The notes: generated by a model not told the origin, from the sequence alone. A stretch of 33,934 bases of DNA from Macrostomum lignano (GCA_002269645.1 NIVC01000794.1:1-33934); one strand, 5' to 3'; positions 1 to 20,600 are shown, numbered from the stretch's first letter. Made by a program: numbers and translations.

Positions 1-3000
1 GCTGAGGATGCTGGCTGCCACTTGCGCGGGCGTCAGCTGGAGCTCCGGGCTGCGGGCGGGAGAAGGGGCGCGGGCTGGTCATTGATTATCGATCGGTTGG
101 GCATTCATTATCGATTAGCTGGTCATTGATTATCGATTAGCTGGGCATTTATTATCGATTACTTGGGCAGTGATTATAGATTGGCTGGGATTGATTATCG
201 ATTAGTTGGGCAGTGATTATAGATTGGCTGGGATAGATAATCGATTGGTTGGTCATTGATTTCCGATTGGCTGGATTGATTATCGACTGGCTGGCATGGA
301 TTATCGATTGGCTGGGATGGATTACCGATTGGCTGGGATGGATTATCGATTGGCTGGGATGGATTATCGATTGGCTGGGATGGATTACGATTGGCTGGGA
401 GTTTGATTATGGATTATGGACCATAACATCATACTCATATCTCAGACGATCACCTCATTCCGGGCTTGACAGACTTGCCAACGAGCACCCCGCCAGATCC
501 GGGGTCAAGGAAGGTCGGGCACACGGTGCTCAGGAAGATCCGGTTCCGCCCGTACAGCTCCATCCGGCGCAGCTCGTCCTGCACAGCTTCCATGAAGCCC
601 AAGCTGCCAAACTTTGAGGCGCTGCAAAAACAGTGAGAATATATAAAGCGTTGGCTTGAAAAACTGAATTTCGCATTAAAGAATTTTTGCCTCACCTGTA
701 GTCGGTGCAGTAGGCGACTCCCATGCAGGCTGCCATGCTGGCCACCGAGACAATGTGGCCTCGGCCTCGCTTGATCATGTGCGGCAGGGCCGCGCGAACC
801 ACCTGCGGCAGGGTGGGGGGAGGGTGCGTTATGGGGTGTGAGATCAGGCTCTGGGTGAGGTGTGATGGCTCTGGGTGAGGTGTGGAATCAGGCTCTTGGT
901 GAGGTGTGGAATCAGGCTCTTGAAGAGGTGTGATGGCTCTGGGTGAGGTATGAGATCAGGCTCTGGGTGAGGTGTGGGATCAGGCTCTGGGTGAGGTGTG
1001 GGATCAGGCTCTGTGTGAGGTGTAGGATCAGGCTCTGGGTGAGGTGTGGGATCAGGCTCTGGGTGAGGTGTGGAATCAGGCTCTGGTGAGGTGTGGAATC
1101 AGGCTCTGGGTGAGGTGTGGGATCATACTCTGGGTGAGGTGTGGGATCAGGCTCTGTGTGAGGTGTGGGATCAGGCTCTGGGTGAGGTGTGGGATCAGGT
1201 CCAGGGTGAGGTGTGGGATCAGGCTCTGGGTGAGGTGTGGGATCAGGCTCTGGGTGAGGTGTGGGATCATACTCTGGGTGAGGTGTGGGATCAGGCTCTG
1301 TGTGAGGTGTGGGATCAGGCTCTGGGTGAGGTGTGGGATCAGGTCCAGGGTGAGGTGTGGGATCAGGCTCTGGGTGAGGTGTGGGATCAGGCTCTGGGTG
1401 AGGTGTGGGATCATACTCTGGTGAGGTGTGGGATCAGGCTCTGTGTGAGGTATGGGATCAGGCTCTGGGTGAGGTGCGATGGCTCTGGTGAGGTGCGATG
1501 GCTCTGGGTGAGGTGTGGGATCAGGCTCTGTGTGAGGTGTGGGATCAGGCTCTGGGTGGTGTGGGATCAGGTCCGGGGTGAGGTGCGATGGCTCTGGGTG
1601 AGGTGCGATGGCTCTGGGTGAGGTGCGATGGCTCTGGGTGAGGTGTGGGATCGGGCTCTGTGTGAGGTGTGGGATCATACTCTGGGTGAGGTGTGGGATC
1701 AGGCTCTGGGTGAGGTATGGGATCAGGCTCTGGGTGAGGTGCGATGGCTCTGGGTGAGGTGTGGGATCTGACTCTGGGTGAGGTGTGGGATCGGCTCTGT
1801 GTGAGGTGTGGGATCAGGCTCTGGGTGAGGTGTGGGATCAGGCTCTGGGTGAGGTGTGAGATCAGGCTCTGGGTGAGGTGCGATGGCTCTGGGTGAGGTG
1901 TGGGATCTGACTCTGGTGAGGTGTGGGATCATACTCTGGGTGAGGTGTGGGATCATACTCTGGGTGAGGTGTGGGATCATACTCTGGGTGAGGTGTGGGA
2001 TCAGGCTCTGTGTGAGGTGTGGGATCAGGCTCTGGGTGAGGTGTGAGATCAGAGTCTGTGTGAGGTGTGAGATCAGGCTCTGGGTGAGGTGTGATGGCTC
2101 TGGGTGAGGTGTGGGATCAGGCTCTGGGTGAGGTGTGAGATCAGAGTCTGTGTGAGGTGTGAGATCAGGCTCTGGGTGAGGTGTGGGATCAGGCTCTGGG
2201 TGAGGTGTGGGATCAGGCTCTGGGTGAGGTGTGAGATCAGAGTCTGTGTGAGGTGTGAGATCAGGCTCTGGGTGAGGTGTGATGGCTCTGTGTGAGGTGT
2301 GGGATCAGGCTCTGGGTGAGGTGTGAGATCAGAGTCTGTGTGAGGTGTGAGATCAGGCTCTGGGTGAGGTGTGATGGCTCTGGGTGAGGTGTGGGATCAG
2401 GCTCTGGGTGAGGTGTGGGATCAGGCTCTGGGTGAGGTGTGGGATCAGGCTCTGGGTGAGGTGTGGGAACATACTCTGGGTGAGGTGTGGTATCAGGCTG
2501 TGTGAGGTGTAGGATCAGGCTCTGGGTGAGGTGTGGGATCAGGCTCTGTGTGAGGTGTTGGATCACCCGGTGGGAAAAAAATGGTCGCCGCGACGGCTTC
2601 TGTTTGTTGCGTTTACGACGGCGGAAACTCCGTTCGAGTGAACGCCGAGTTTCCGTCGCCACAACGGTCGCTGCGACGGCGGTCGGAAGACCCATTAGCG
2701 ACTCTTATATGCGTACGATACTACTTGTATCGTGTAGTAGTGTAGATGGACCATGATATATCCCACGAATTTTTTATTTTTTCGGAATAAAAAAGAAACG
2801 AAATATAGATGCAGTCCTTTTCAACAAATAAACATTATGTTGCTATGGGAAATGCTTTTTAGCATTATATTTATAGAATTACCTGATTATTCAGTTCCTG
2901 CTAGAGAAGAAAAAATTCACCCATAGACATACTTCAAAAAAGTACAATAATATCAAACTGTTGTTTATTAAGCATACACGAAGCGTACAAGAAAGCAATC

Positions 3001-6000
3001 GTTCACAATATTAAGTACAATAAAGTACAATAAGGTATAAATGGCCTATAGGGTCCATTGTACCCCACAGACAAATAAGCAGTCATCAATAGAAATATGG
3101 CGTGCATTAGCTAACTAATTTTCTGATTATGAACATTGAGCAACTACTCCAGATCAGAGCAGTACTCGAGTTCGAGCTCTTGCTCAACTCAGAGTTTGAG
3201 GTGAAACTTGCCAGTTATTGCTCACTTTATTCATACGGCCAAATGACTAATTCAATGGGCTTTCTATGCACATAAAGTAATAACACTGTTATGTACAGAA
3301 GCTGCAATAATAGTCGATTTATGGGGTCAAAAAACTCATTATTTTTTAAACGTTTGGGGTTTAGAGTAAAAGATCAGCTGTATCATTTAACATATAAGGA
3401 CACCTAATTTAGCGCCCCAAGGACATCTAGTTTGATCCCCTAAGGACACCTAATTTATCGCCCCAAGTACATCTAGTTTATCGCCCCAAGGACACCTAAT
3501 TTAGCGCCCCAAGGACATCTAGTTTGATCCCCTAAGGACACCTAATTTATCGCCCCAAGTACATCTAGTTTATCGCCCAAGGACACCTAATTTAGCGCCC
3601 CAAGGACATCTAGTTTATCCCCTAAGGACACCTAATTTATCGCCCCAAGGACATCTAGTTTAGCGTCCCAAGGACACCTAATTTATCGCCCCAAGGACAC
3701 CTAATTTAGTGCCCAAGGACATCTAGTTTAACGCCCCAAGGACACCTAATTTAGCGCCCAAGGACATCTAGTTTAGCGTCCCAAGGACACCTAATTTATC
3801 GCCCCAAGGACACCTAATTTAGCGCCCCAAGGACATCTAGTTTAGCGTCCCAAGGACACCTAATTTATCGCCCCAAGGACACCTAGTTTAGCGTCCCAAG
3901 GACACCTAATTTATCGCCCAAGGACACCTAGTTTAGCGTCCCAAGGACACCTAATTTATCGCCCCAAGAACACCTAGTTTAGCGTCCCAAGAACATCTAG
4001 TTTGACCCCTAAGGACACCTAATTTATCGCCCCAAGGACACCTAATTTAGCGCCCCAAGGACATCTAGTTTAGCGTCCCAAGGACACCTAATTTATCACC
4101 CCAAGGACACCTAATTTATCGCCCCAAAACATCTAGTTTGACCCCCTAAGGACACCTAATTTATCGCCCCAAGGACACCTAATTTAGCGCCTCAAGGACA
4201 TCTAGTTTAGCGTCCCAAGGACACCTAATTTATCGCCCCAAGGACACCTAGTTTAGCGTCCCAAGGACACCTAATTTATCGCCCCAAGGACACCTAGTTT
4301 AGCGTCCAAGGACACCTAATTTATCGCCCCAAGAACACCTAGTTTAGCGTCCCAAGTACATCTAGTTTGACCCCACAGAGAATCGCTCGCTGTGAGAAGC
4401 GCCAATTGACAACTGCTTTCAGAAATTTTTCTTTGAGACTCACTGTATGAGAATCTCTTTCATGCGAGAATTGTCCCTTGCGAAGAACCTTGCAAAAATC
4501 GATTCGCAGAGACCCTAACCTGACGTTTTGATAACTCAAATCTCCAATCCATAGGCGCGTATGGTAATTATAAAGCTTCCTCTCTGGCTCAATGGCCTCC
4601 ATAAAATTTAGAAAATGCTGTGGAAAAATTTCGGCATGCAGTTGGCTTTTGCGAATTTTCTTCTTGATGAATAGCTATTTGCATATGCCATTTTCTAACG
4701 CCCTATAAACACATTTTACAATCGGCTTTCGCGTGGCTATATCTGAGAATAAACATATTTTCAAGACAGCTAATTATGGAGGTGGGAACAGTAAAATGGG
4801 GCATCTTTGTGAGAAGGGCAACTGAACCACAAAAGGGAAATTCTTAGCTTACTATATGCACCTAAAAATGAGGCATAGAAATGAGATTTTGAGATTGGGG
4901 GATTTTTGCGTCACCGATTGTCGGGGGATTTTCCGGAGAATTCCCAGGGGGGCTTTGTTTTGACGGGAGGGTGATAGTTGTGCACATATGATGGTTAAGG
5001 CGATGGAGACTCGTCAGATAAGTCCTGCGAATCAGGATAGTGCCGCTTTCCGCTGCCCTGCTCGGGTGCACTTGGGCGCTTCTTCGCCTTCTTGCGCAGG
5101 TTGTCCCCCGCATGCTTAAGAGCCGAGATGACGTGTTTTTCTACATCTCGCTCAGATGGCCTCTCATGAGGCTTGTCGTCTTTGTACATCGTGGAAACGG
5201 CTCCTGGAATTGGATTGGTGGTTTTATTCTGTCAAATTTATTCTACTCTATGCTCCATAGTCCCTACTTTAAGTAGACATTATTCACTTGAATTTGTCTA
5301 AATGTTTCATTCTGAACCAGTTTCATTGAAGAAACTATACTATAAAATTAGGCAAAATGATTCTGATTCTAGATTTACAATTACACACTTTCGGATTTCT
5401 GTAAACTTACGCTTCAGAAGAGGAAGCAGTGTTGTCTGGAAGCCAAGGCTGTCATCTGTTCCCGCGCCGCCGGACCTCTCGGCCAAGCCTCGACCGCAAT
5501 AGTTTAGCTGGGCCATCATTTCAGGGGTGATACACTTTAGCAGCATCCGTCGGATGGTGCTCGCAACACTGTCACCCCGGCAGCGTGCCAGTTGCGTGCG
5601 CAGAACTTTCTGTGCCTCCTTATCTGATGCCAGCTTTAGATAGCCCGCCCACGAAGCAGCTGGTTGCCATTCAGCTTCGGGCAGCTCGATGATAGTGCCG
5701 CCAACAGTCGAGTTGCCCTGCCTGTTGAGGGCCGCCAGAATCTCCCGCTGCTGCTGTTGTATTGTTGCGTCTCGCTGCTCTTGGAGCTGCTGGCCGCGCA
5801 ACACCAGCAACATCAGCTGCGAGATACCCTTCAGACTCGCCAAGTCACCGAACTTGGCTGTTAAGTCCATCATCAGCCTGCGAGCGGCTTGGTTCTCCAG
5901 TTGTAGGCCCACGCTTTCCCTGTTGCGGCTCTGGGTGCTTGAGCTAGCAGCTGTGATAGCAGCAGCAGCAGCAGCAGCAGTGAAACTCTGGTCATGTTGA

Positions 6001-8523
6001 GGCCCTGGTGTCGATGTAGCCGTAGCGGTATCTGTTGGCTGAATAGAATAGGGGTGGGGGACAAATCATTACACTCATTACTCCGGATCTGCGAATACAT
6101 TTATGTCATTTTCTTGTATAAAGCATATACACCTTATACTTTCATAGTCTCGAATTCGTACTTAAAATTTAATGCGAACATAGCATAGCATTTATCAATC
6201 ACAATTACTAATCTTGCACACTCATTTATTTATTACTTTGAAGTTGCTGCTGTCGAGACTATAGTGACTAAAATGATGTGCAAAGATGACCAGGGGACCG
6301 GATTAACCTTTCCCAAGAATTAAACATGTCAAGGCGCTCACTATAGTATAAATATACCGTACCCACGGCCAAGCGCCTGAGCGTTATAAATATTTTGTTG
6401 TACTTTTTATTTGCGACTCAGTTGTCATGATTTACCATAGAAAATTTCCTTTTACAGTTCTTTCTCGCAGTTAAGTTTCTCGCTTCATATCTTCTCATCG
6501 TTTAACTCATAATATATATACTTGAATTCAGCCCAAGTTGACCTATAATTTCACTACAGCGTAAATCTAAAAATTGGTCTGCCATGACATTTTCATCGTC
6601 AGGTAGTGAGACACAAGGTGTGCTATGCTTACCCGCACCGAACGATGCAAATCCGACGGAGAAGCGGCTGCTGCTGAAGGTGAAGCTCGGTTCTGCATGG
6701 GTAGTAGTTGAGCCGCCTCCATACTCGGCTTAGGTACCACAGAAGCTCCATGTGGATGGCTCGCGGATGCTGCTGGCTGCCCGGAACCGACATCAGCCTC
6801 TGAATCCATCGTGCCATGATCCGATTGGAGTGCCTGCACAGATAGATCGCATAGTATGGGAATGGATTATATAGTTTATCCAGGTGTATGATTATTTCAA
6901 AGCCCGAAATTATCTCACGTTATGCTTAGACTATAACGACGCAACAGTGAAGGGAAAGGCCCGAATTATACTCATTTTTCTAAGCTAGCAGAATTATATT
7001 TTACCTGATGGCTTGTGGATAACTCCGTTAAAGCAGCCCTTGGCCTTAGCTTAGAGTTTATTCTTAGAAACGTACAAACAAAAATAGGAGTAAAATCATT
7101 CTCCTTCCCTGTCCGCAACCGTTGTTTTTACCCATAATCCGCTCATTCCTTTCCACTCTGCCCTCCGACCACTCCCACACTTCCATTTGTATTTCTAAGA
7201 ACGAATTCTTTCTACTGCACTGCAAAAAGACAGTCAAAAAGCTTTTTCGACGGCGTGATTTTTGGCTCCTGTTCTGATCGATAGACACCTGGTTTCTTAA
7301 TAATTTAGTTTGGTAAATTATCTTTTACATACCTGCACGGGCTTCAGCAGCAGCCGCTTCTTCACTCCGGGACAAATAACGCGTGGCGAAACCTGAAGGA
7401 ACATTCGCTTCGGGCGAAAGTCTTTTTCAAGCCGGCACCTGCGGCAGTACTGTATGACTCTTGTAAGATCATACCCGTCATCAAGCGATACCTGAGAAGT
7501 AAGGATTGGGTGTAAATCTAAATTGTATGGTATAAGTCGTCCCCGACTCCATTTTATTTGTATGCATTATATAGATGAAGGTAGCAGGCTGCAGGTCTTG
7601 ATAAAGTGCGGACGGTTTTTATATTCTACGGAATACCTGCGGAATGGTGTAAAATATTTATGATGCGGACATTGTTTTGGCTCCAATGGCTTCCTCATCA
7701 AACGATGCAATATTTCCCCGCATTCAGCTACATGCTATACCATCGTGGCCCTTGTTATATGCACTTTTCAATTTCCGAAAAATGTGCACTGCTCTATTTC
7801 CAGTAGTGTAGTCGGGCATAGGAATCATAACAATCAAAGTGGAAAAACTGGTAGAAATTTCTGCTTCTTGACACGGTACGGTGGACTCAATTTAAACATT
7901 GTTATTGCCTAAAGAGTCTGTTGTGGCAGTAACAGGCTTTGAAAGCCCAGGAAAAGCAATTATATTAAGGAATTTATTCTATTCCGCATTCCGGTTCCGC
8001 AGTTTATAAAGAGCCGCAGGCTGCAGCTGACCAAACAATAGAAATAAGATAAAAAAGTCAATATCATTTGCTTACCAATATAACTGTTGCTTCGTAGAAG
8101 GCGTCTCCGTAGATGGCGCTGCAACGGATCCGCTCCGTCTCATGATCATCACTTTGAGCAAAGCCTATCCAGTCATTGTGACTGTCAAACGTAGCGAATC
8201 GCCCTTGAAGCCTTATTTGTTCAAAAGGTACTTCAACTACTTCCAGGTCGCAACTAAAAATTACTACGAAGCGCATTGCCATATACGAGCGTACTAGAGC
8301 TGAGAGATAACTACAGAAACGATCAGATAGATATGTCAGATGCTCATAGGAATTGTTCTACGAAGTGAATAGTATCTGACTCAGAAAGTCGTAGTCTGTT
8401 CTTAAATGCCACTTAATTCTTTTGTGAACCAATGAGAAAGCTACTGCTCTTTTTATCCTCTCTCTCGTTTGCATTCTTTTAGTCCTCATGTTCAGCGACA
8501 GCCAATGGGAGATCTTAGTGCAT

Positions 8524-8569
<46 letters not shown>

Positions 8570-8891
8570 TCGTCTGTTTGATTAGACTTCAGGTTTCTAT
8601 ATTATTGCCTATATTTTAGAGAAGGGGACAGAATATAGAATTTTGCACCCAGTTTATAATTGTGTCTCTGTCTCTCTGTGGGGCTCTGGGGGCTTCCCCT
8701 ACTTTTCCTCTCCTCTCCTTTACCCCTTTCTCTCCCTGTCTCTCTCTCCCTCCCTCTCTCACCCTCTCACAGTCTTCCTCTCAGTCTCACTCACTTTATC
8801 TCCTCCTCTCCGTCTCTCCCTCATCCCTATCTCTCTCTCCCTCTGTATGTGTCTCTGTCTCTTCTCTCTGTCCCCTCTCTTTTCTCTCTCC

Positions 8892-8935
<44 letters not shown>

Positions 8936-8974
8936 TGTATGTGTCTCTGTCTCTTCTCTCTGTCCCCTCTCTTT

Positions 8975-9069
<95 letters not shown>

Positions 9070-12000
9070 GTCTATCCCTCATCCTCTCTCTCCCTCTGTG
9101 TGTCTGTCTCTCTCTTCCCACCTCTCTCTCTCTTTCTCTCTGTTATCTTGCCTATGAGATACATAGATACATTGTGATGGTGGGTAGGAGGGTATGCTGT
9201 GCTATGTGGCGCCACTCTGTCTGTAACGATGAGACTTTATCGGTACACCCACATTCCGGCTGGCCATGAATATGGAACTGAGTGTTCGCAAAAAGGCCCT
9301 CAAACCCCCACTACCCCTATCTTTTACATTTCTAAGTTTGAAAATCGGAAATGAAGAGCGTGGGAAAATTACTTGAATTGGCTTAGAATGTTAAGATTTA
9401 GTATATTTGATTGCTCTTTGTTTGCCGGGGCTTCAGCACACACCCTCCATCTTGCACCCTGCCTTTTCCGGATCCACCAAAATACGCAACAGACTGAGTG
9501 TTGTGATCTGTACCCTGGCCCCTCCCCTTCCTTTGATGCAGGCTCCTGCTTGATTTCCCTGCTTGATTAGTTGCTAAAATGCTATTGCTAAAATTTGTGA
9601 TTCAAAGGTAACGATAAAAATAAATTCTAAAAAAAACATTTGTATTTGTATTTACTAATACAGCTTTACAGCTATTTGTATTCATTTCTCCGCCTTCGAG
9701 TATCTGGAAAGCTGATTAGGCTAGAGATCCGATTCTTTCTGCAAAAGACACCGACTGGGGTGCTCTAATTATCTGTAGAGTCTCATATCTGAATCTACAG
9801 ATACAGCTTGGCAGTTGCTGATTGATTTTTTTGGCTTTCCCTATTAAAATACATTAGAATTTCTAGGAATCTCCGCTTTTGAATATCTGGAAAGCTGATT
9901 AGGCTAGAGATCCGATTCTTTCTGCAAAAGACACCGACTGGGGTGCTCTAATTATCTGTAGAGTCTCATATCTGAATCTACAGATACAGCTTGGCAGTTG
10001 CTGATTGATTTTTTTGGCTTTCCCTATTAAAATACATTAGAATTTCTAGGAATCTCCGCTTTTGAATATCTGGAAAGCTGATTAGGCTAGAGATCCGATT
10101 CTTTCTGCAAAAGACACCGACTGGGGTGCTCTAATTATCTGTAGAGTCTCATATCTGAATCTACAGATACAGCTTGGCAGTTGCTGATTGATTTTTTTGG
10201 CTTTCCCTATTAAAATACATTAGAATTTCTAGGAATCTCCGCTTTTGAATATCTGGAAAGCTGATTAGGCTAGAGATCCGATTCTTTCTGCAAAAGACAC
10301 CGACTGGGGTGCTCTAATTATCTGTAGAGTCTCATATCTGAATCTACAGATACAGCTTGGCAGTTGCTGATTGATTTTTTTGGCTTTCCCTATTAAAATA
10401 CATTAGAATTTCTAGGAATCTCCGCTTTTGAATATCTGGAAAGCTGATTAGGCTAGAGATCCGATTCTTTCTGCAAAAGACACCGACTGGGGTGCTCTAA
10501 TTATCTGTAGAGTCTCATATCTGAATCTACAGATACAGCTTGGCAGTTGCTGATTGATTTTTTTGGCTTTCCCTATTAAAATACATTAGAATTTCTAGGA
10601 ATCTCCGCTTTGAATATCTGGAAAGCTGATTAGGCTAGAGATCCGATTCCTTCTGCAAAAGACACCGACTGGGGTGCTCTAATTATCTGTAGAGTCTCAT
10701 ATCTGAATCTACAGATACAGCTTGGCAGTTGCTGATTGATTTTTTTGGCTTTCCCTATTAAAATACATTAGAATTTCTAGGAATCTCCGCTTTTGAATAT
10801 CTGGAAAGCTGATTAGGCTAGAGATCCGATTCTTTCTGCAAAAGACACCGACTGGGGTGCTCTAATTATCTGTAGAGTCTCATATCTGAATCTACAGATA
10901 CAGCTTGGCAGTTGCTGATTGATTTTTTTGGCTTTCCCTATTAAAATACATTAGAATTTCTAGGAATCGCCGCTTTTGAATATCTGGAAAGCTGATTAGG
11001 CTAGAGATCCGATTCCTTTCTGCAAAAGACACCGACTGGGGTGCTCTAATTATCTGTAGAGTCTCATATCTGAATCTACAGATACAGCTTGGCAGTTGCT
11101 GATTGATTTTTTTGGCTTTCCCTATTAAAATACATTAGAATTTCTAGGAATCTCCGCTTTTGAATATCTGGAAAGCTGATTAGGCTAGAGATCCGATTCC
11201 TTCTGCAAAAGACACCGACTGGGGTGCTCTAATTATCTGTAGAGTCTCATATCTGAATCTACAGATACAGCTTGGCAGTTGCTGATTGATTTTTTTGGCT
11301 TTCCCTATTAAAATACATTAGAATTTCTAGGAATCTCCGCTTTTGAATATCTGGAAAGCTGATTAGGCTAGAGATCCGATTCTTTCTGCAAAAGACACCG
11401 ACTGGGATGCTCTAATTATCTGTAGAGTCTCATATCTGAATCTACAGATACAGCTTGGCAGTTGCTGATTGATTTTTTTGGCTTTCCCTATTAAAATACA
11501 TTAGAATTTCTAGGAATCTCCGCTTTTGATCTATGACATCGAGAATTAGAGCGCGCCATTGAATTTCTCGTAAAATTGTGATTGAATGCTAATGCAAATA
11601 AAGTAATTTTAATTCAGCTCATATTTAATTTAAATAACTTAATTTCAAAGCAAACGTTCTTCCTATTTGTCGTGTAATTTGCGGCCGCTTTGAGGCTTTG
11701 TCATTGGAGGATTCATCATGCGGCGGGGATGAGGTGGGGAACAGTTAAGGGGTGTGGGGAACGAATAAAATTAATGAGCTATGTTAGACTGTGTTAGATT
11801 TCCCGCGGGGGATCTAATCAGACCAATAAGTCGACATCACAGACCAATGAGTGTTCTGTAAATCTAAAAGATTGCTTGCTTCTTCCCGTGGCCCCAAGTG
11901 TTACTTGCATACATTCGTATTGGTGCAGTGAAGTAAAGGTCTTACAAAGCTGTTTGCTCATAGAGTAGTGTCCTATGCCCTACTTATAGTAGGCACAAGA

Positions 12001-15000
12001 CAACACGTTTAAACTTCGGAAGACTAATAATGCATTATAATGTACAACAAAATTCCAAGTCTGATTTTTACACGATGAAGAAGTCGATATTTCAACACCC
12101 TTGATTAAACCAGGACTCAAATTTCCCTATTTGCATCCCAGCTGCATAGCAACATATTTTCCCTTGGATACCATTGTTTCTATCACCTCAGCTGTTCCCA
12201 TTAAGGATTATGATGTCCCAGATTGCACATTAAAGCGAACTGACTACATTTTAAGCAAAGAAACGTATTCGTTATGCCATAATCGGCAAAATGCAATCAA
12301 TAGATTTATCCATGACAAAGATCAATATCCTTAGTCAAGCATTTGATTAACGAGTTCAAAATTTTAACAGCAGACAAGACGTTAAATTTCTATGCAACAC
12401 TTTAAAATTTGCACTTTAAACAGCCAGTGCAGAAATAGTCGTATACAAGAAAAAATAATTTGTTACTATGCGGTTGGACTGCTAGGGTAACAAATTCACA
12501 AGGAGTCTGTTCGCCTGCAAGCCAAAATTAAATAAGGTTGGGGACTTTAGAGGTTTAATTTGGCCTAGACCGTTGTATTAAGAAGATACCTATTAGTAGG
12601 TAAAACATCATGAAATGAAATGACATAAAATGACCATTTATCTAAAAAGTACCGATTCCAAAGCTCTATAAGTCTTTGAAGGCGACTCAAGTTACGCTTT
12701 TATAAGCCATATAAAATTTATTTGCCTGAGAAAGGCTAATGCGCAGTTCATACTACTGAGTAGTATTCTGCATACATGTGGGTCGCCAATTAGGCTAACA
12801 GTCGAGTGCTTGGCGACCCGGAGGTTAGCCGACCCATTTTAGTACGCGGGCGCGACCAGGCGCATAACCTCTGATCAAGCGACCCTTTGGCGACCATGTC
12901 AAATTATTGATATTTCACTTCCTTAACCCCGAACTAACCTCAAACAGCCCGTTTTGAGTCATTTGGAGTACATTAGTAGCAGAAAAAAAATTCGACCCGA
13001 AATACGACGGACAGCCGTCGCAACTCCGTCGCCGCGACCATTTTTTTCCCATCGGGCAGGCTCTGGGTGAGATGTGGGATCAGGTCCTGGGTGAGGTGTG
13101 GGATCAGGTCCTGGGTGAGGTGTGGCCGTGTGGCACTAGATTGCGGCAAGCCCAGCCAGCTCACCCAGATGGTGCCCATGAGGTTGACATCCACAGTGGC
13201 CCGGATCTGCGCCTCCGTCAGGTCCAGCAGCGGCCGGCCCTGGAAGACGCCGGCATTGCTGACCAGGATGTCCAGCTTGCCGAAACGCCGGACAACGTCG
13301 GCCAGGCAGTCGGACACGCTGTCCGGCCGGGTGACGTCCATCTGGTAGCTGGCAGTCAGATAGCCCCGCGACTCCAGCGACTTGGCCGCGTCGTGGACGG
13401 CAGCCTGGTGTGGGAGGGATTTTCACATAGAAAATATTCACATAGACAAAATGGGACTTCAATACGACGAACATGAAATTCTGACGAAAGTGACCATGGG
13501 ATTTTTTGAGTATCTCACTGAGAATCTCGAAAGGTGGTGGTGGTCCAGCAACTGACACTCTGGAAGGCTGGCACAGCAACTGAGGATCTGGGAGGCTGGC
13601 CCAGAAACTGCGGATCTGGGAGGCTGGTCCAGCAACTGCGGATCTGGGAGGCTGGTCCAGCAACTGAGGATCTGGGAGGCTGGTCCAGCAACTGAGGATC
13701 TGGGAGGCTGGCCCAGCAACTGAGGATCTGGGAGGCTGGTCCAGCAACTGACACTCTGGAAGGCTGGCACAGCAACTGGAGAACTGGGAGGCTGGTCCAG
13801 CAACTGAGGATCTGGGAGGCTGGTCCAGCAACTGACACTCTGGGAGGCTGGCCCAGCAACTGAGGATCTGGGAGGCTGGCCCAGCAACTGAGGATCTGGG
13901 AGGCTGGTCCAGCAACTGACACTCTGGAAGGCTGGCCCAGCAACTGGGGAACTGGGAGGCTGGTCCAGCAACTGAGGATCTGGGAGGCTGGCCCAGCAAC
14001 TGAGGATCTGGGAGGCTGGCCCAGCAACTGAGGATCTGGGAGGCTGGTCCAGCAACTGAGGATCTGGGAGGCTGGTGCAGCAACTGAGGATCTGGGAGGC
14101 TGGCCCAGCAACTGAGGATCTGGGAGGCTGGCCCAGAAACTGCGGATCTGGGAGGCTGGTCCAGCAACTGAGGATCTGGGAGGCTGGCCCAGCAACTGAC
14201 ACTCTGGGAGGCTGGACCAGCAACTGAGGATCTGGAAGGCTGGCCCAGCAACTGAGGATCTGGGAGGCTGGCCCAGCAACTGAGGATCTGGGAGGCTGGC
14301 CCAGCAACTGAGGATCTGGGAGGCTGGTCCAGCAACTGAGGATCTGGGAGGCTGGCCCAGCAACTGAGGATCTGGGAGGCTGGTCCAGCAACTGAGGATC
14401 TGGGAGGCTGGCCCAGCAACTGAGGATCTGGGAGGCTGGTCCAGCAACTGAGGATCTGGGAGGCTGGCCCAGCAACTGAGGATCTGGGAGGCTGGTCCAG
14501 CAACTGAGGATCTGGGAGGCTGGTCCAGCAACTGAGGATCTGGGAGGCTGGCCCAGCAACTGAGGATCTGGGAGGCTGGCCCAGCAACTGAGGATCTGGG
14601 AGGCTGGCCCAGCAACTGAGGATCTGAAAGGCTGGCCCAGCAACTGAGGATCTGGGAGGCTGGCCCAGCAACTGAGGATCTGGGAGGCTGGTCCAGCAAC
14701 TGAGGATCTGGGAGGCTGGCCCAGCAACTGAGGATCTGGGAGGCTGGCCCAGCAACTGAGGATCTGGGAGGCTGGTCCAGCAACTGAGGATCTGGGAGGC
14801 TGGTCCAGCAACTGAGGATCTGGGAGGCTGGCCCAGCAACTGAGGATCTGGGAGGCTGGCCCAGCAACTGAGGATCTGGGAGGCTGGCCCAGCAACTGAG
14901 GATCTGGGAGAAAACGCACTCACGCTGACATCGGTGAGCACAGTGACGCATTTCTGCTTGGCGAAGAGCTCAGCGGTAGCCAGGCCGATGCCCTGGGCAG

Positions 15001-15238: not shown

Positions 15239-15855
15239 AGGACCTGAATTTGATCGATGGGACCTGAATTTGATCGATGGGACCTGAATTTGATAGGACC
15301 TAAATTTGATGGGACCTAAATTTGATGGGACCTGAATTTTATGAGACCTAAATTTGATGGGACCTAAATTTGATGGGACCTGAATTTGATGGGACCTAAA
15401 TTTGATGGGACCTGAATTTGATGGGACCTAAATTTGATGGGACCTGAATTTGATGGGACCTGAATTTGATAGGACCTAAATTTGATGGGACCTAAATTTG
15501 ATGGGACCTAAATTTGATGGGATCTGAATTTGATGGGACCTGAATTTGATAGGACCTAAGTTTGATAGGACCTAAATTTGATGGGACCTGAATTTTATGA
15601 GACCTGAATTTGATAGGACCTAAATTTGATGGGACCTAAATTTGATGGGTCCTGAATTTGATGGGACCTGAATTTGATAGGACCTAAATTTGATAGGACC
15701 TAAATTTGATGGGACCTGAATTTTATGAGACCTAAATTTGATGGAACCTAAATTTGATGGAACCTAAATTTGATAGGACCTAAATTTGATGGGACCTAAA
15801 TTTGATGGGACCTAATTTCGAGGGGACCTAATATAATGATAGGACCTAAATTTGA
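15239..15855. repeat. 16-bp minisatellite (GGGACCTAAATTTGAT) immediately upstream of the SDR start codon
   Basis: About 38 tandem copies beginning about 22 nt upstream of the ATG at 15217. Confidence 0.95.
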
Positions 15856-16630: not shown

Positions 16631-17505
16631 CCCCAGAATCTACCCCAGAATATCTATCCGCATCTACCCCAGAATATCTATCCGCATCTACCCCAGAATA
16701 TCTATCCACATCTACCCCAGAATATCTATCCGCATCTACCCCAGAATATCTATCCGCATCTACCCCAGAATATCTATCCGCATCTACCCCAGAATATCTA
16801 TCCGAATCTACCACAGAATATCTATCCGCATCTAACCCAGAATATCTATCCGCATCTTCACAGGAAAATTTATCCACATCTACTCAGGGATATCTATCAA
16901 CATCTACTCAGGAATATCTATCCGCATCTACTCAGGAATATCTATCCGCATCTACCCCAGAATATCTATCCGTATCTACCCCAGAATATCTATCCGCATC
17001 TAACCCAGAATATCTATCCGCATCTACCCCAGAATATCTATCCGCATCTACCCCAGAATATCTATCCGCATCTCCCCAGAATATCTATCCGCATCTACCC
17101 CAGAATATCTATCCGCATCTACCACAGAATATCTATCCGTATCTACCCCAGAATATCTATCCGCATCTAACCCAGAATATCTATCCGCATCTCCCCAGAA
17201 TATCTATCCGCATCTACCCCAGAATATCTATCCGCATCTACCCCAGAATATCTATCCGCATCTACCCCAGAATATCTATCCGCATCTACCCCAGAATATC
17301 TATCCGCATCTACCCCAGAATATCTATCCGCATCCACCCCAGAATATTTATTCGCATCTACCCCAGAATATCTATCCGCATCTACCCCAGAATATCTATC
17401 CGCATCTACCCCAGAATATCTATCTGCATCTACCCCAGAATATCTATCCGCATCTACCCCAGAATATCTATCTGCATCTACCCCAGAATATCTATCCGCA
17501 TCTAC
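16631..17505. repeat. 24-bp minisatellite (CCCCAGAATATCTATCCGCATCTA) downstream of the AIFM3-like stop codon
   Basis: About 36 tandem copies, with a more diverged patch at about 16855-16940. Confidence 0.96.
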
Positions 17506-17684: not shown

Positions 17685-20600
17685 TCAGACGAGGCTCTTC
17701 AAGTCTACAGGCTGGCCCTTCTCCAGCAAGTTAGCCAGCACCACGGGGGCCGGGCCCGCGCCCACGGCCACCCCCGCCACCACCTGGTCGGCCTCCCCAA
17801 CCAGGTAGGTCATAAATTTGAATTCTTCCTTAGGCTCGGCCACTACGGCCCGTTTCCATGGCGACGAGGGCCGGCCGTCGCCGCCGGCGGCCAGGGCGGT
17901 GTAGCGGAAGCCGGTGCCGAACATCAGCGTCCAGAAGAAGGTGGCGAGCGGCTGCCGTACCGGCTTGCCGAGCATCGACCTGGCGGCCAGGCGGCCCTGC
18001 GTCTGCGCCGTCTGCCAGTGCCCGTAGCCGAGGACGTCGCCGGCGCCAAAGACGTTCGAGTCCGACGGCGAGCGAAGGTCCGGGCCGACCACCAGCGGGC
18101 TGCCCGGCTTGCCTCCGGCGAGGAGGCCGGCCGGCAGGAAGGCGGTGTTGGGCGTGGAGCCGATGCCCACCACACAGAGCTGAGCAGGCAGGGTGTCGCC
18201 CGACTTCAGCTTCAGACCGGACAGACCGCCCTGGGAGAGGGTGGGGTAAGGCTGGAGTACGTCTTCAATCGATCACTACAGTGAGGCTGGAGTGAGTCAT
18301 CAATTAGGGAGGCTGGAGTGCATCATCAATCAGTGAGTGAGGCTGAAGTGCATCATCAATCAGTGAGGCTGGGGTGCGTCATTAATCAGTGAGGCTGGAG
18401 TGCATCATCAATCAATCAGTGAGGCTGGAGTGCATCATCAATCAATCAGTGAGGCTGGAGTGCATCATCAATCAATCAGTGAGGCTGGATTGCATCATCA
18501 ATCAATCAGTGAGGCTGGAGTGCATCATCAATCAATCAGTGAGGCTGGAGTGCATCATCAATCAATCAGTGAGGCTGGAGTGCATCATCAATCAAGCAGT
18601 GAGGCTGGAGTGCATCATCAATCAATCAGTGAGGCTGGAGTGCATCATCAATCAGTGAGGCTGGAGTGCATCATCAATCAATCAGTGAGGCTGGAGTGCA
18701 TCATCAATCAGTGAGGCTGGAGTGCATCATCAATCAATCAGTGAGGCTGGAGTGCATCATCAATCAATCAGTGAGGCTGGAGTGCATCATCAATCAAGCA
18801 GTGAGGCTGGAGTGCGTCATCAATCAATCAGTGAGGCTGGAGTGCATCATCAATCAATCAGTGAGGCTGGAGTGCATCATCAATCAAGCAGTGAGGCTGG
18901 AGTGCGTCATCAATCAATCAGTGAGGCTGGAGTGCATCATCAATCAATCAGTGAGGCTGGAGTGCATCATCAATCAATCAGTGAGGCTGGAGTGCGTCAT
19001 CAATCAATCAGTGAGGCTGGAGTGCGTCATCAATCAATCAGTGAGGCTGGAGTGCGTCATCAATCAATCAGTGAGGCTGGAGTGCATCATCAATCAGAGG
19101 CTAATTATTCACCCACAGCCTCAGCACCAGCCCTCACCTGAGCATCGGAGGCGAAGGACTGCAGCTCCCCAATCACGAACTTGACTCCCTTGCTCTCGTG
19201 CAGCCGCCGGGCAGCCTTGCCGGCCTCTTCGCCGAACAGCGCCTTGAACGGCACGGGATCTCGGGCGAGCACCGTGACGGACTTGGCACCGTTGGCGACC
19301 AGGTAGGCGGCGGACTCCAGCGCGATGAAGGACGATCCGATGAGGACGGCGTCTGCGCCCTGACCGGCCGCGTGAATTCGCTTGGAGTCGTCCGGACTCC
19401 GCAGGTAGAAAACTCCGCGCTGAGGCGTGTCGACCTGGGATGGTTTTTGACGCAATCGATGAGGGCCGATCGTCCGGGGTGTACATGCTTGACAATGATA
19501 CGCGAGACAATAATAATAATAATAATAATAATAATAATTGATTACACCTGCCCTAATAGGCAGATGTGCAACCGACAGCTCAGCCGCAGCTATTGCGCGG
19601 TGCATCTGAAGGCTGCGTACGGCTGTTCAGTCCAAGGACTGGGGGGTCGCCACACACACCCTCGATTACCCCAGCTAATGCTGGCACCCATTTTACAGAC
19701 TGGTTGAACTGAAGCAAAGCAGAGTTAGGTGTCTTGCCCAAGGACACAAATTGTTCCAGTTGGATCGGGAATTGAACCCCCGACCTTCAAGTCGTGAGTC
19801 CTACGCTCTAACCGCTAGGCTACAACCTTTATCGCAATAAGTTCCTTACCAAGTCCAGGCGGGTTCAAACTTCAAAGTGGTGTATTTCTAGGAAAATTTG
19901 AATCAGGTGATCCCGCAGATCCCCCGAACAGCATTAGCAGCAGGTGCTCACAGCCATCTGCCTGGCCGAGGAACCTGAGCACACCAGCAGCTTGGTGTAG
20001 GGCAGAACCACTCGGCCATTCTTAGACTGAAACTCCACAGTCCGCTGGGCCGGGTCTACGGACTCAACTCGGGACTCCAGCATGAGCTCAATGTCATGCT
20101 GAGCATAGTGCTCAGCGGTGCGCAGCAGCGCCGGCTCGGCGGCCATGGCTTTGCTCAGCTTCGTGCGGTCGAACGGCGGCACGGAGTCGGCGCTGAGCAC
20201 CGTCAGCTTGCCGCGGTAGCCCTCCTGCCGCAGGCTGTCGGCGGCGGCTGCAGCGGCCGGCCCGCCGCCAACGATGACGAAGTGCTCGGATGCGAACTCC
20301 GGCTGGTAGCCGGCCAGCGGGCGCTGCACCACGAACTTGCCGTCCGCTGGCGGCGTGCCCTCCACCAGCACCATCTGGTCCGAGGCGCGCACCGACACCT
20401 GAGTGCGGGATAAGCGACGTAAGTTAACGAGGAATTCGCCGATACACTCAGCGACAAGATCAGCGACACACTCAGCAACAAGATCAGCGACACACTCAGC
20501 GACAAGATCAGCGACACAATCAGCAACAAGATCAGCGACACACTCAGCAACAAGATCAGCGACACACTCAGCGACAAGATCAGCGACACACTCAGCAACA

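What the first reader, a model, noticed from the sequence alone, without database searches (positions are those of the whole stretch)
2564..13058. 10.5-kb transposase-less TIR element with a 2-bp TSD hidden inside a minisatellite in an SDR intron
Seen: 31-bp TIRs (29/31 identical) with CCC...GGG termini and a CA duplication; excision restores a minisatellite unit exactly. Established: 2-bp TSDs and subterminal motif clusters occur in animal EnSpm/CACTA (CMC) elements, whereas piggyBac needs TTAA. Inference: this is a large non-autonomous element carrying an intact spliced gene, two satellites and a GA tract, mobilised in trans. It expands the host intron from about 1.9 kb to 12.4 kb and is invisible in the ORF track.
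Basis: partly seen in the sequence, partly recalled or inferred. Interest (0 to 1): 0.82.

Follow-up and report, generated by a model that had tools for sequence, protein, structure and literature searches.

The report
Transposase-less CACTA-type transposon in flatworm intron
The 10.5-kb insert is a real, very recently mobile DNA transposon of the flatworm Macrostomum lignano, of the known animal CACTA-related type (CCC ends, 2-bp target duplication), with no transposase of its own but an intact gene for a probable DNA-binding helper protein.

Summary
The window is Macrostomum lignano DNA. Window 2566-13056 is bounded by 31-nt inverted repeats (29/31) starting CCC and ending GGG. It is flanked by a CA duplication, and it splits a 24-bp minisatellite in a short-chain dehydrogenase intron.

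I recovered ten more places carrying this element in the M. lignano assembly. Six independent full-length insertions (8.7-13.3 kb) all have a perfect, different 2-bp duplication: CA, GT, AA, TG, TT, TA. Their unique DNA is 99.8-100% identical, so transposition was very recent.

No copy holds a transposase, not even a remnant. All copies carry the same intact five-exon gene (467 aa). Its product models as a Tudor-like N-terminal barrel plus a C-terminal BEN/DUF4806-like domain.

Diverged paralogues of this gene (about 30% identity) sit in other M. lignano elements with CCCAGTG ends and 2-bp duplications. Those elements also encode a DDE transposase with the CMC signature and a RAG1/Transib-like fold.

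The element therefore belongs to the known animal 'TRC' branch of CACTA/En-Spm, first described in Schistosoma in 2006. The carried gene is most likely the lineage's own accessory gene, not captured cargo. No autonomous partner with the same ends was found.

The parts
2564..2565 (.). Left copy of the 2-bp target-site duplication (CA)
   Evidence: Five other full-length copies have their own matching dinucleotides.
2566..2596 (+). TIR at the end downstream of the element's gene: CCCGGTGGGAAAAAAATGGTCGCCGCGACGG
   Evidence: This end is identical in all ten other places carrying the element except L017, which differs in homopolymer length.
2583..2702 (.). Left subterminal cluster of GGTCGC / CGACGG / GTCGC motifs
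   Evidence: the motifs are concentrated in the terminal 300 bp, with about 0.1-0.2 expected from the interior.
3396..4368 (.). 23-bp satellite (about 43 copies, with a 91-bp higher-order unit)
   Evidence: Present in all copies, with variable copy number.
4995..8282 (-). ORF2 gene, 467 aa. Exons: 8282-8076, 7491-7333, 6833-6633, 6038-5411, 5203-4995. The product models as a Tudor-like N-terminal barrel, a disordered linker, long helices (aa 236-297) and a C-terminal BEN/DUF4806-like domain.
   Evidence: Gene model. It differs by one residue (M99I) from PAA69771.1, which a source names a DUF4806 domain-containing protein. The CDS is intact in every copy. AlphaFold2 model and Foldseek search: the top four PDB matches are BEN domains.
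8729..9141 (.). TC/GA-rich low-complexity tract, with a short (TC)n at 8531-8569
9687..11529 (.). 183-bp satellite, 10.1 copies at 99% matches. Copy-number differences account for most of the length variation between copies (29 units in L008).
12781..13039 (.). Right subterminal cluster of GCGACC / CGACGG motifs
13026..13056 (-). TIR at the end upstream of the gene. Reverse complement: CCCGATGGGAAAAAAATGGTCGCGGCGACGG. The two mismatches to the other TIR are fixed in every copy that includes this end.
13057..13058 (.). Right copy of the 2-bp target-site duplication (CA)
803..13164 (-). Host intron of the short-chain dehydrogenase (adh_short) gene. It contains the 24-bp minisatellite (835-2565 and 13063-13125) that the element interrupts.
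   Evidence: Donor TGG|GTGAGC at 13165/13164. Acceptor CAG|GTGGTT at 803/802. Pfam adh_short hit on the flanking exon. Minisatellite.

Best explanation
Window 2566-13056 is one copy of a young, multi-copy family of cut-and-paste DNA transposons of Macrostomum lignano. The family belongs to the animal CACTA-related ('TRC') branch of the CMC (CACTA/En-Spm, Mirage, Chapaev) superfamily.

Shown here:
- exact TIR-bounded ends;
- non-specific 2-bp target-site duplications at six independent loci;
- near-identity between copies;
- no transposase in any copy;
- an intact gene conserved in every copy;
- related M. lignano elements with CCCAGTG ends and 2-bp duplications that encode a CMC-type, RAG1/Transib-fold DDE transposase next to a paralogue of that gene.

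Inferred:
- The element is excised and reinserted by a CMC transposase supplied in trans. The source would be an unidentified autonomous sibling or one of the related families.
- That enzyme recognises the conserved CCCRGTGG tips and makes cuts staggered by 2 bp at the target.
- The element's own protein acts like TnpA of maize En/Spm. Its BEN-like domain would bind the family-specific subterminal GGTCGC/CGACGG repeats, bring the two ends together and recruit the transposase.
- The element is thus a transposase-deletion derivative that kept the accessory gene. The slot where relatives carry the transposase, upstream of ORF2, is now filled by a 183-bp satellite and a GA-rich tract.
For: Organism and gene. 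ORF2 differs by one residue (M99I) from M. lignano PAA69771.1.

Mobility.
- Full-length copies, bounded exactly by the TIRs, lie at different loci with their own duplications: window CA, L002 GT, L003 AA, L004 TG, L005 TT, L016 TA.
- Lengths range from 8,749 to 13,313 bp.
- The 4.16-kb unique core is 99.8-100% identical among eight copies.
- The CDS shows one substitution across all copies.

No transposase.
- tblastn finds nothing in the window or in any copy.
- A profile HMM against the six-frame window gives a best E-value of 2, while the control locus L010 scores 2.7e-165.

Related autonomous elements.
- L009 type: 6,003 bp, CCCAGTGGAAAAG ends. Its bounds are confirmed by three copies with duplications CT, AA and TC. 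It carries a 636-aa transposase next to ORF2 paralogue P0010, which is 31% identical over its full length.
- L010 type: CCCAGTGGGAC ends, AT duplication, transposase plus paralogue P0015.
- L012 type: CCCAGTGTTCC ends, TA duplication, transposase only.

The transposase is of the CMC type.
- Invariant D190, D265, C284-x2-C287, H485-x3-H489 and E509 in 32 homologues. This is the signature described in PMC12730594.
- Homologues hit Pfam DUF4218 (7 of 15), DUF1258 (4 of 15) and Transposase_21 (3 of 15).
- The AlphaFold2 model has pLDDT 85. Its top 36 PDB matches are all RAG1 or HzTransib, with E from 1e-9 to 3e-6.

Literature. CCC termini with a 2-bp TSD define animal TRC/CACTA elements: SmTRC1 in Schistosoma, CCCAGTCAAC in Aedes, and an En/Spm element in Hydra.

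ORF2 fold. The top four PDB matches are DNA-bound BEN domains, probability 0.84-0.99. The N-terminal domain resembles a Tudor domain.

Subterminal repeats. Each family has its own motif: GGTCGC/CGACGG here, CAACGG in L009, GGGCGG in L010, TTCCGGAA in L012.
Against: - No autonomous copy with these TIRs was found. The genome could not be searched by DNA. Only two annotated M. lignano transposase clusters exist, and neither shares the element's gene-cluster names.
- The related families' TIRs match this element only over about 8-13 terminal bases, so cross-mobilisation is unproven.
- The BEN assignment rests on weak Foldseek E-values (0.19-0.5) and on names given by a source. Pfam HMMs give no hit on ORF2.
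- Nothing shows that ORF2 binds the subterminal repeats. L012-type elements have a transposase but no detectable ORF2, so ORF2 may not be needed for transposition.
- There are too few substitutions to test for selection on ORF2: 1 in exons, 1 in introns, 5 in flanks.
- No empty allele was seen. The second contig of this locus (L006) also carries the insertion.
Confidence: 0.85

Rival explanations
1. ORF2 is a host gene captured once by a non-autonomous element (Pack-CACTA-like cargo) and has no role in transposition. The element is simply a deletion derivative that hitch-hikes on a transposase.
For: Plant CACTA elements are known to capture host DNA (Pack-CACTA papers listed). L012-type elements have a transposase but no ORF2. 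BEN-domain proteins are ordinary chromatin factors in animals (targets).
Against: Every detectable homologue is a multi-copy M. lignano gene, apart from one short metagenome fragment. Paralogues only about 30% identical lie directly beside CMC transposases, inside TIR-bounded elements, in two other families. That pattern fits an old element-borne gene better than a recent capture. No single-copy host progenitor was found.
Confidence: 0.2
2. The element is a piggyBac-like or other non-CMC transposon, because its termini are CCC...GGG as in piggyBac.
For: The CCC...GGG termini are read directly from the sequence.
Against: None of the six duplications is TTAA and all are 2 bp. Elements with the same CCCRGTG tips and 2-bp duplications in this genome encode a transposase with the CMC motif set and a RAG1/Transib fold, not a piggyBac one. 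CCC with a 2-bp duplication is the published TRC/CACTA signature.
Confidence: 0.02
3. The copies arose by segmental duplication or assembly redundancy rather than by transposition.
For: Two loci are each present on two contigs with about 99.5-99.7% identical flanks: window with L006, and L004 with L017. The M. lignano assembly is known to contain duplicated regions (my own knowledge).
Against: Six loci have unrelated flanks. Homology starts and stops exactly at the TIR tips, and each locus has its own 2-bp duplication. The insertion restores the register of a minisatellite unit when removed.
Confidence: 0.02
4. ORF2 itself catalyses transposition, so the element is autonomous through an unrecognised transposase.
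For: It is the only intact gene, and it is perfectly conserved in all copies.
Against: The model shows a small beta-barrel, a disordered linker, long helices and a BEN-like helical domain. There is no RNase H-like, HUH or recombinase fold. Paralogues co-occur with a bona fide DDE transposase.
Confidence: 0.03

Closest known systems
SmTRC1 and other animal 'TRC' (Transposon Related to CACTA) elements: Schistosoma mansoni, Aedes aegypti, Tribolium castaneum (DeMarco et al. 2006, PMC1636069); Hydra Spongebob / EnSpm-4N1_HM (PMC4298943)
   Same: - TIRs begin with CCC. Aedes has CCCAGTCAAC and Hydra CCCAGCCAAC, against CCCGGTGGG here and CCCAGTG in sister families.
- 2-bp target-site duplications.
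- Internal tandem-repeat blocks.
- Insertion in introns.
- A flatworm host.
- A transposase of the Transposase_21/DUF4218 lineage in the autonomous relatives.
   Different: - This family has no transposase at all.
- It is two to three times longer than SmTRC1: 8.7-13.3 kb against 4.5 kb.
- It carries a separate five-exon gene for a Tudor-like plus BEN-like protein, which is not described for SmTRC1.
- Its TIR is 31 nt, against 54 nt in SmTRC1.
Maize En/Spm (CACTA), with TnpD (transposase) and TnpA (binds subterminal repeats), and its defective dSpm/I derivatives (my own knowledge of the family)
   Same: - Two-protein logic in the autonomous relatives: a DDE transposase plus a second protein.
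- Clusters of short subterminal repeats at both ends.
- Defective derivatives that are mobilised in trans.
   Different: - Termini are CCC, not CACTA.
- The TSD is 2 bp, not 3 bp.
- ORF2 has no sequence relation to TnpA.
- In the M. lignano autonomous relatives the transposase and ORF2 are annotated as two separate genes.
- DNA binding by ORF2 is untested.
Mirage / Chapaev / Transib / RAG1 (other CMC and CMCT lineages; PMC12730594, PMC4079192)
   Same: [quoted passage not shown] TSDs fall in the 2-5 bp range. There are weak Pfam DUF1258 hits.
   Different: Chapaev has CAC...GTG termini and 3-4 bp TSDs. Transib has 5-bp TSDs. Most CMCT termini are CA...TG, whereas these are CCC...GGG.
BEN-domain DNA-binding proteins (Insensitive, Bsg25A, NACC1, BEND6, BANP) and Pfam DUF4806
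   Same: The C-terminal domain of ORF2 (about aa 310-440) gives BEN domains as its top structural matches. A source names the protein and its paralogues DUF4806- or BEN-domain-containing. DUF4806 has been reported as structurally equivalent to BEN (PMC10789644). It is expanded together with transposase domains in Hydra (PMC7642931).
   Different: There is no Pfam HMM hit in the copy used here. Foldseek E-values are only 0.19-0.5. The protein is encoded inside a transposon and is present in many copies.

Membership tests
Animal TRC branch of CACTA/En-Spm (CMC superfamily) | TIRs whose first three bases are CCC | tested here: met
   CCCGGTGGG... and CCCGATGGG... at both ends, in the window and in the other copies at every end present. 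Criterion taken from PMC1636069.
Animal TRC branch of CACTA/En-Spm (CMC superfamily) | 2-bp target-site duplication | tested here: met
   6 of 6 independent full-length loci: CA, GT, AA, TG, TT, TA. Removing the element restores the minisatellite register.
Animal TRC branch of CACTA/En-Spm (CMC superfamily) | [quoted passage not shown] | tested here: not met
   No transposase or remnant in the window or in any copy. The feature is met only by related M. lignano families with CCCAGTG ends, 2-bp TSDs and, in L009 and L010, an ORF2 paralogue. Membership is therefore as a non-autonomous element, by its ends and by association.
Animal TRC branch of CACTA/En-Spm (CMC superfamily) | A cognate autonomous element with the same TIRs exists in the genome | tested here: inconclusive
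   None among the ten other places sampled. Only two annotated M. lignano transposase clusters exist, neither linked to this element. No DNA search of the M. lignano genome was possible with these tools.
Animal TRC branch of CACTA/En-Spm (CMC superfamily) | Subterminal short repeats at both ends (a CACTA trait) | tested here: met
   GGTCGC 8 of 9 and CGACGG 7 of 10 occurrences lie in the terminal 300 bp. Analogous family-specific clusters occur in the L009, L010 and L012 types.
piggyBac | TTAA target-site duplication | tested here: not met
   All six TSDs are 2 bp, and no flank reads TTAA.
Tc1/mariner | TA target-site duplication | tested here: not met
   Only 1 of 6 TSDs is TA.
Chapaev (CMC) | CAC...GTG termini and a 3-4 bp TSD (PMC4079192) | tested here: not met
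   Termini are CCC...GGG and the TSD is 2 bp.
BEN / DUF4806 domain proteins (for ORF2) | Match to the Pfam BEN or DUF4806 sequence model | tested here: not met
   No Pfam family at E-value up to 5-10 for ORF2 or for P0001, P0002 and P0004. A source nevertheless labels P0001 as DUF4806 and paralogue P0014 as BEN.
BEN / DUF4806 domain proteins (for ORF2) | BEN-like helical fold | tested here: met
   In the AlphaFold2 model the C-terminal domain has pLDDT 80-90. The Foldseek top four are 4ix7, 4x0g, 8yzs and 7yun, with probability 0.84-0.99 and target TM-score 0.40-0.67, but E-values of only 0.19-0.5.
BEN / DUF4806 domain proteins (for ORF2) | Sequence-specific DNA binding | not testable with these tools
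   This needs EMSA or DAP-seq with the subterminal repeats.

The most novel reading that the evidence does not exclude
The M. lignano CCC-type CMC elements may work as a split system. The transposase would recognise only the conserved CCCRGTGG tips. A rapidly evolving Tudor-like plus BEN-like ORF2 protein would read family-specific subterminal repeats and give each family its identity.

This transposase-less family would then be a new kind of parasite. It brings its own specificity subunit and borrows a generic transposase from a different family. It would also be currently active in the laboratory strain, moving 9-13 kb of DNA.
Probability: 0.25. Interest if true: 0.6.

Novelty: new member of a known kind. 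Interest (0 to 1): 0.4.

Why it matters
**Genome annotation.** At least ten 'hypothetical protein' gene models in the M. lignano assembly are copies of this transposon gene: the Mlig029153, Mlig003033 and Mlig017078 series. At least one UniProt model (P0003) fuses the gene's N-terminus to unrelated sequence. The element also inflates host introns about six-fold.

**Transposon biology.** The finding documents CACTA-related CCC-type elements in a free-living flatworm. It describes their previously unreported second gene. It also gives a clean case in which a transposase-less derivative keeps that gene intact in every copy, which makes the role of the accessory protein testable.

**M. lignano as a model.** M. 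lignano is a transgenic regeneration model. Near-identical copies with perfect duplications imply a cut-and-paste system that was active very recently and tolerates 9-13 kb between its ends. Once its transposase is identified, it could be tried as an insertional tool.

Tried and rejected
- **Pfam on ORF2 and its paralogues.** No significant family.
- **First splice model.** My first model for exon 4/5 (donor at 5385 or 5379) was replaced by the annotated junction (5411 joined to 5203), which reproduces PAA69771.1 apart from one residue.
- **L001.** This copy is truncated at its upstream side inside the 183-bp satellite, next to an ACAD9 exon, so it cannot give a TSD.
- **L008.** An assembly gap hides its upstream end.
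- **L006 and L017.** They are second contigs of the window locus and the L004 locus, not new insertions. No empty allele was therefore seen.
- **Autonomous partner.** None among the ten other places carrying the element. Two protein searches found only the Mlig021851g7 and Mlig024569g1 transposases in M. lignano.
- **Transposase profile against PDB sequences.** No hit. The fold search was needed instead.
- **Hydra transposase locus L015 and M. lignano L012.** No ORF2 homologue with the M. lignano profile. The ORF2 association is therefore shown only for two M. lignano families.
- **L011 (paralogue P0031).** No transposase within 10 kb, and no convincing CCC-type TIR pair was found.
- **Rfam on the window.** Nothing.
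- **Literature.** No paper links BEN/DUF4806 genes to CACTA elements or describes CMC elements in M. lignano.
- **Selection test on ORF2.** Too few substitutions to say anything.

Full report

Yes.
- The window has 31-nt inverted repeats at 2566-2596 and 13026-13056, 29/31 complementary. They begin CCC and end GGG, and each is flanked by CA.
- It is the only long, high-identity, non-low-complexity inverted repeat in the window.
- Its 17-nt core occurs exactly twice, in inverted orientation, against 0.04 expected.
- The insertion lies in a 24-bp minisatellite (835-2565, continuing at 13063-13125). Deleting the element and one CA gives GGATCAGGCTCTGGG, in register with the repeat unit.
- Short motifs cluster at both ends. 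GGTCGC has 8 of 9 and CGACGG has 7 of 10 occurrences within the terminal 300 bp.
- The interior holds a 23-bp satellite, a TC/GA tract and a 183-bp satellite.
- The host gene is a short-chain dehydrogenase on the minus strand. Its intron runs 803-13164, 12,362 bp; it would be 1,869 bp without the insert.

**2. What organism, and what is the gene inside?**

- On the minus strand there is a five-exon gene with GT-AG introns: 8282-8076, 7491-7333, 6833-6633, 6038-5411 and 5203-4995. It encodes 467 aa.
- It differs by one residue from Macrostomum lignano PAA69771.1, which a source labels 'DUF4806 domain-containing'. The window is therefore M. lignano DNA. Locus L007, from contig NIVC01000794.1, is 100% identical to the element.

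**3. Is it mobile?**

Looking up the contigs that encode this protein cluster gave ten other places carrying the element in assembly GCA_002269645.1.

Homology to the element begins and ends exactly at the TIR tips. Each independent full-length insertion has its own perfect 2-bp duplication:

| Locus | Length (bp) | TSD |
|---|---|---|
| window / L007 | 10,491 | CA |
| L002 | 8,749 | GT |
| L003 | 9,998 | AA |
| L004 | 11,445 | TG |
| L005 | 10,624 | TT |
| L016 | 13,313 | TA |

- Six of six matching dinucleotides has a chance probability of about (1/16)^6. There is no target consensus.
- L006 and L017 are second contigs of the window locus and the L004 locus.
- L001 is truncated, and L008 is interrupted by an assembly gap.
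- Length differences come mainly from satellite copy number, for example 29 units of the 183-bp repeat in L008.
- The 4.16-kb unique core is 99.8-100% identical among eight copies, with seven variable columns.
- The CDS is intact in all copies, with a single substitution overall.
- The two TIR mismatches are fixed in every copy, so they are a family feature and not decay.

The family therefore transposed very recently.

**4. Is there a transposase?**

No.
- tblastn with a related transposase finds nothing in the window or in any copy.
- A profile of 32 homologues, searched without filters against the six-frame window, gives a best E-value of 2. The same profile scores 2.7e-165 on a control locus.

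**5. Which superfamily?**

*ORF2 relatives.* An exhaustive HMMER search found ORF2 relatives almost only in M. lignano. They form several multi-copy paralogue groups, 24-32% identical, with the same architecture.

*Elements carrying paralogues or the transposase:*
- Paralogue P0010 lies in a 6,003-bp element in L009 (6585-12587).
  - Its exact bounds are confirmed by three copies with TSDs CT, AA and TC.
  - Its termini are CCCAGTGGAAAAG...GGG.
  - Directly upstream of the paralogue this element encodes a 636-aa protein.
- Paralogue P0015 lies in a 9.4-kb element with CCCAGTGGGAC termini and an AT duplication, beside an unannotated homologue of the same protein.
- A third family (L012; CCCAGTGTTCC, 23/25 TIR, TA duplication) has that protein but no ORF2.

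*The 636-aa protein is a CMC transposase:*
- Invariant D190, D265, C284-x2-C287, H485-x3-H489 and E509 across 32 homologues. This is the motif set said to unite En/Spm, Mirage, Chapaev and Transib (PMC12730594).
- Homologues hit Pfam DUF4218, DUF1258 and Transposase_21.
- A confident AlphaFold2 model (pLDDT 85, pTM 0.81) finds only RAG1 and Transib transposase among its top 36 PDB matches, with E from 1e-9 to 3e-6.

*Literature.* DeMarco et al. 2006 defined animal 'TRC' CACTA-related transposons by CCC-initiated TIRs, 2-bp duplications and a Transposase_21 domain. They worked first in the flatworm Schistosoma mansoni; the Aedes element has the TIR CCCAGTCAAC (PMC1636069). A Hydra En/Spm element was assigned to this group on the same criteria (PMC4298943).

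The window element meets the terminal and TSD criteria. Its relatives supply the transposase criterion. piggyBac (TTAA), Tc1/mariner (TA) and Chapaev (CAC termini, 3-4 bp TSD) are excluded.

**6. What does the carried gene do?**

- An AlphaFold2 model built from the paralogue alignment has two confident domains: aa 1-100 and aa 310-440.
- The top four PDB matches are DNA-bound BEN domains (Insensitive, Bsg25A, NACC1, BEND6), with probability 0.84-0.99 but E-values of only 0.19-0.5. The N-terminal barrel resembles a Tudor domain.
- A source names the family DUF4806 or BEN. DUF4806 has been reported as structurally equivalent to BEN (PMC10789644). It is expanded together with transposase domains in Hydra (PMC7642931).
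- Pfam HMMs give no hit.
- Each element family has its own subterminal repeat: GGTCGC/CGACGG here, CAACGG in L009, GGGCGG in L010 and TTCCGGAA in L012. The extreme tips (CCCRGTG) are shared.

From this I infer that ORF2 is the lineage's own accessory DNA-binding protein. It would be functionally analogous to TnpA of maize En/Spm (my own knowledge of that system). It would bind the subterminal repeats and help a transposase supplied in trans. This step is not shown, and the ORF2-less L012 family shows that ORF2 is not universal.

**7. Mechanism, with confidence**

- Shown: a TIR-bounded, transposase-less, recently amplified element with 2-bp duplications.
- Strongly inferred (about 0.85): it is mobilised by a CMC/TRC DDE transposase.
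- Inferred (about 0.4-0.5): ORF2 acts as an end-binding cofactor.
- Unknown: which transposase does the work. The genome could not be searched by DNA, and the two annotated M. lignano transposase clusters are not linked to this family.

**8. Novelty and verdict**

- The kind has been known since 2006, including in flatworms, and non-autonomous derivatives are commonplace.
- I found no description of this family, of CMC elements in M. lignano, or of a BEN-like second gene in animal CACTA-type elements.
- It is a well-supported new member of a known kind, with a moderately interesting accessory gene and signs of very recent activity in a laboratory model.

Noticed in passing
L009:6585-12587 (also L013:6579-12600 and L014:6585-12586): A 6.0-kb apparently autonomous CMC/TRC element. 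It has CCCAGTGGAAAAG termini, 2-bp TSDs (CT, AA, TC) and CAACGG/CAACGTTG subterminal repeats. It carries a 636-aa DDE transposase gene followed by an ORF2 paralogue (P0010). The L013 copy's transposase matches in two pieces that skip residue 400, and the gene called there is only 154 aa.
   Followed up: yes
L010:3936-13324 and L012:6637-14857: Two more CCCAGTG-type families. L010 (TSD AT) has an unannotated transposase on the minus strand (about 7709-9679) divergent from ORF2 paralogue P0015. L012 (TSD TA, 23/25 TIR, TTCCGGAA repeats) has a transposase (P0050) but no detectable ORF2.
   Followed up: partly
window 13541-14910; L001:5840-6271; L010:21305-21518: The same 28-bp minisatellite unit (TGGCCCAGCAACTGAGGATCTGGGAGGC) occurs in arrays at three unrelated loci, in introns of different genes. 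At least some M. lignano intronic minisatellites therefore belong to dispersed families.
   Followed up: partly
window 27392-28712: A 50-bp minisatellite (26.6 copies, 97% matches) in the ODAD1-like gene. Its unit contains the last 15 nt of the exon plus the GTGAGC donor (TACCTGCAGACTAAG|GTGAGC), so the 5' splice site is reiterated about 26 times.
   Followed up: no
window 73-415, 835-2565, 13541-14910, 15276-15855, 16638-17505, 18279-19096, 20440-22528, 27392-28712, 29408-30066: Most introns sampled in the window carry a long minisatellite (units of 8-50 bp, up to 87 copies). These arrays create long spurious ORFs on both strands.
   Followed up: no
window 17685-22780 (minus strand) and 25900-27400 (plus strand): The neighbouring host genes are an AIFM3-like gene (Rieske plus pyridine nucleotide-disulphide oxidoreductase) and an ODAD1 (outer dynein arm docking complex) coiled-coil gene.
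   Followed up: partly
L008 and L016 (both on contig NIVC01001564.1): Two copies of the element lie about 24 kb apart in the same orientation on one contig. The L008 copy has 29 units of the 183-bp satellite and is interrupted by an assembly gap.
   Followed up: partly
Proteins P0003, P0009, P0006: Public gene models of ORF2 include a chimera with unrelated sequence, named AAA_16 by a source and carrying a Pfam myosin-head hit (P0003), and frame-shifted or alternative splice models (P0009, P0006). This suggests the transposon gene is mis-annotated as host genes.
   Followed up: no
Protein P0021 (JGI metagenome contig, 1,539 bp): The only ORF2-like sequence outside M. lignano is a 122-aa N-terminal-domain homologue on an environmental contig, presumably from another flatworm.
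   Followed up: no
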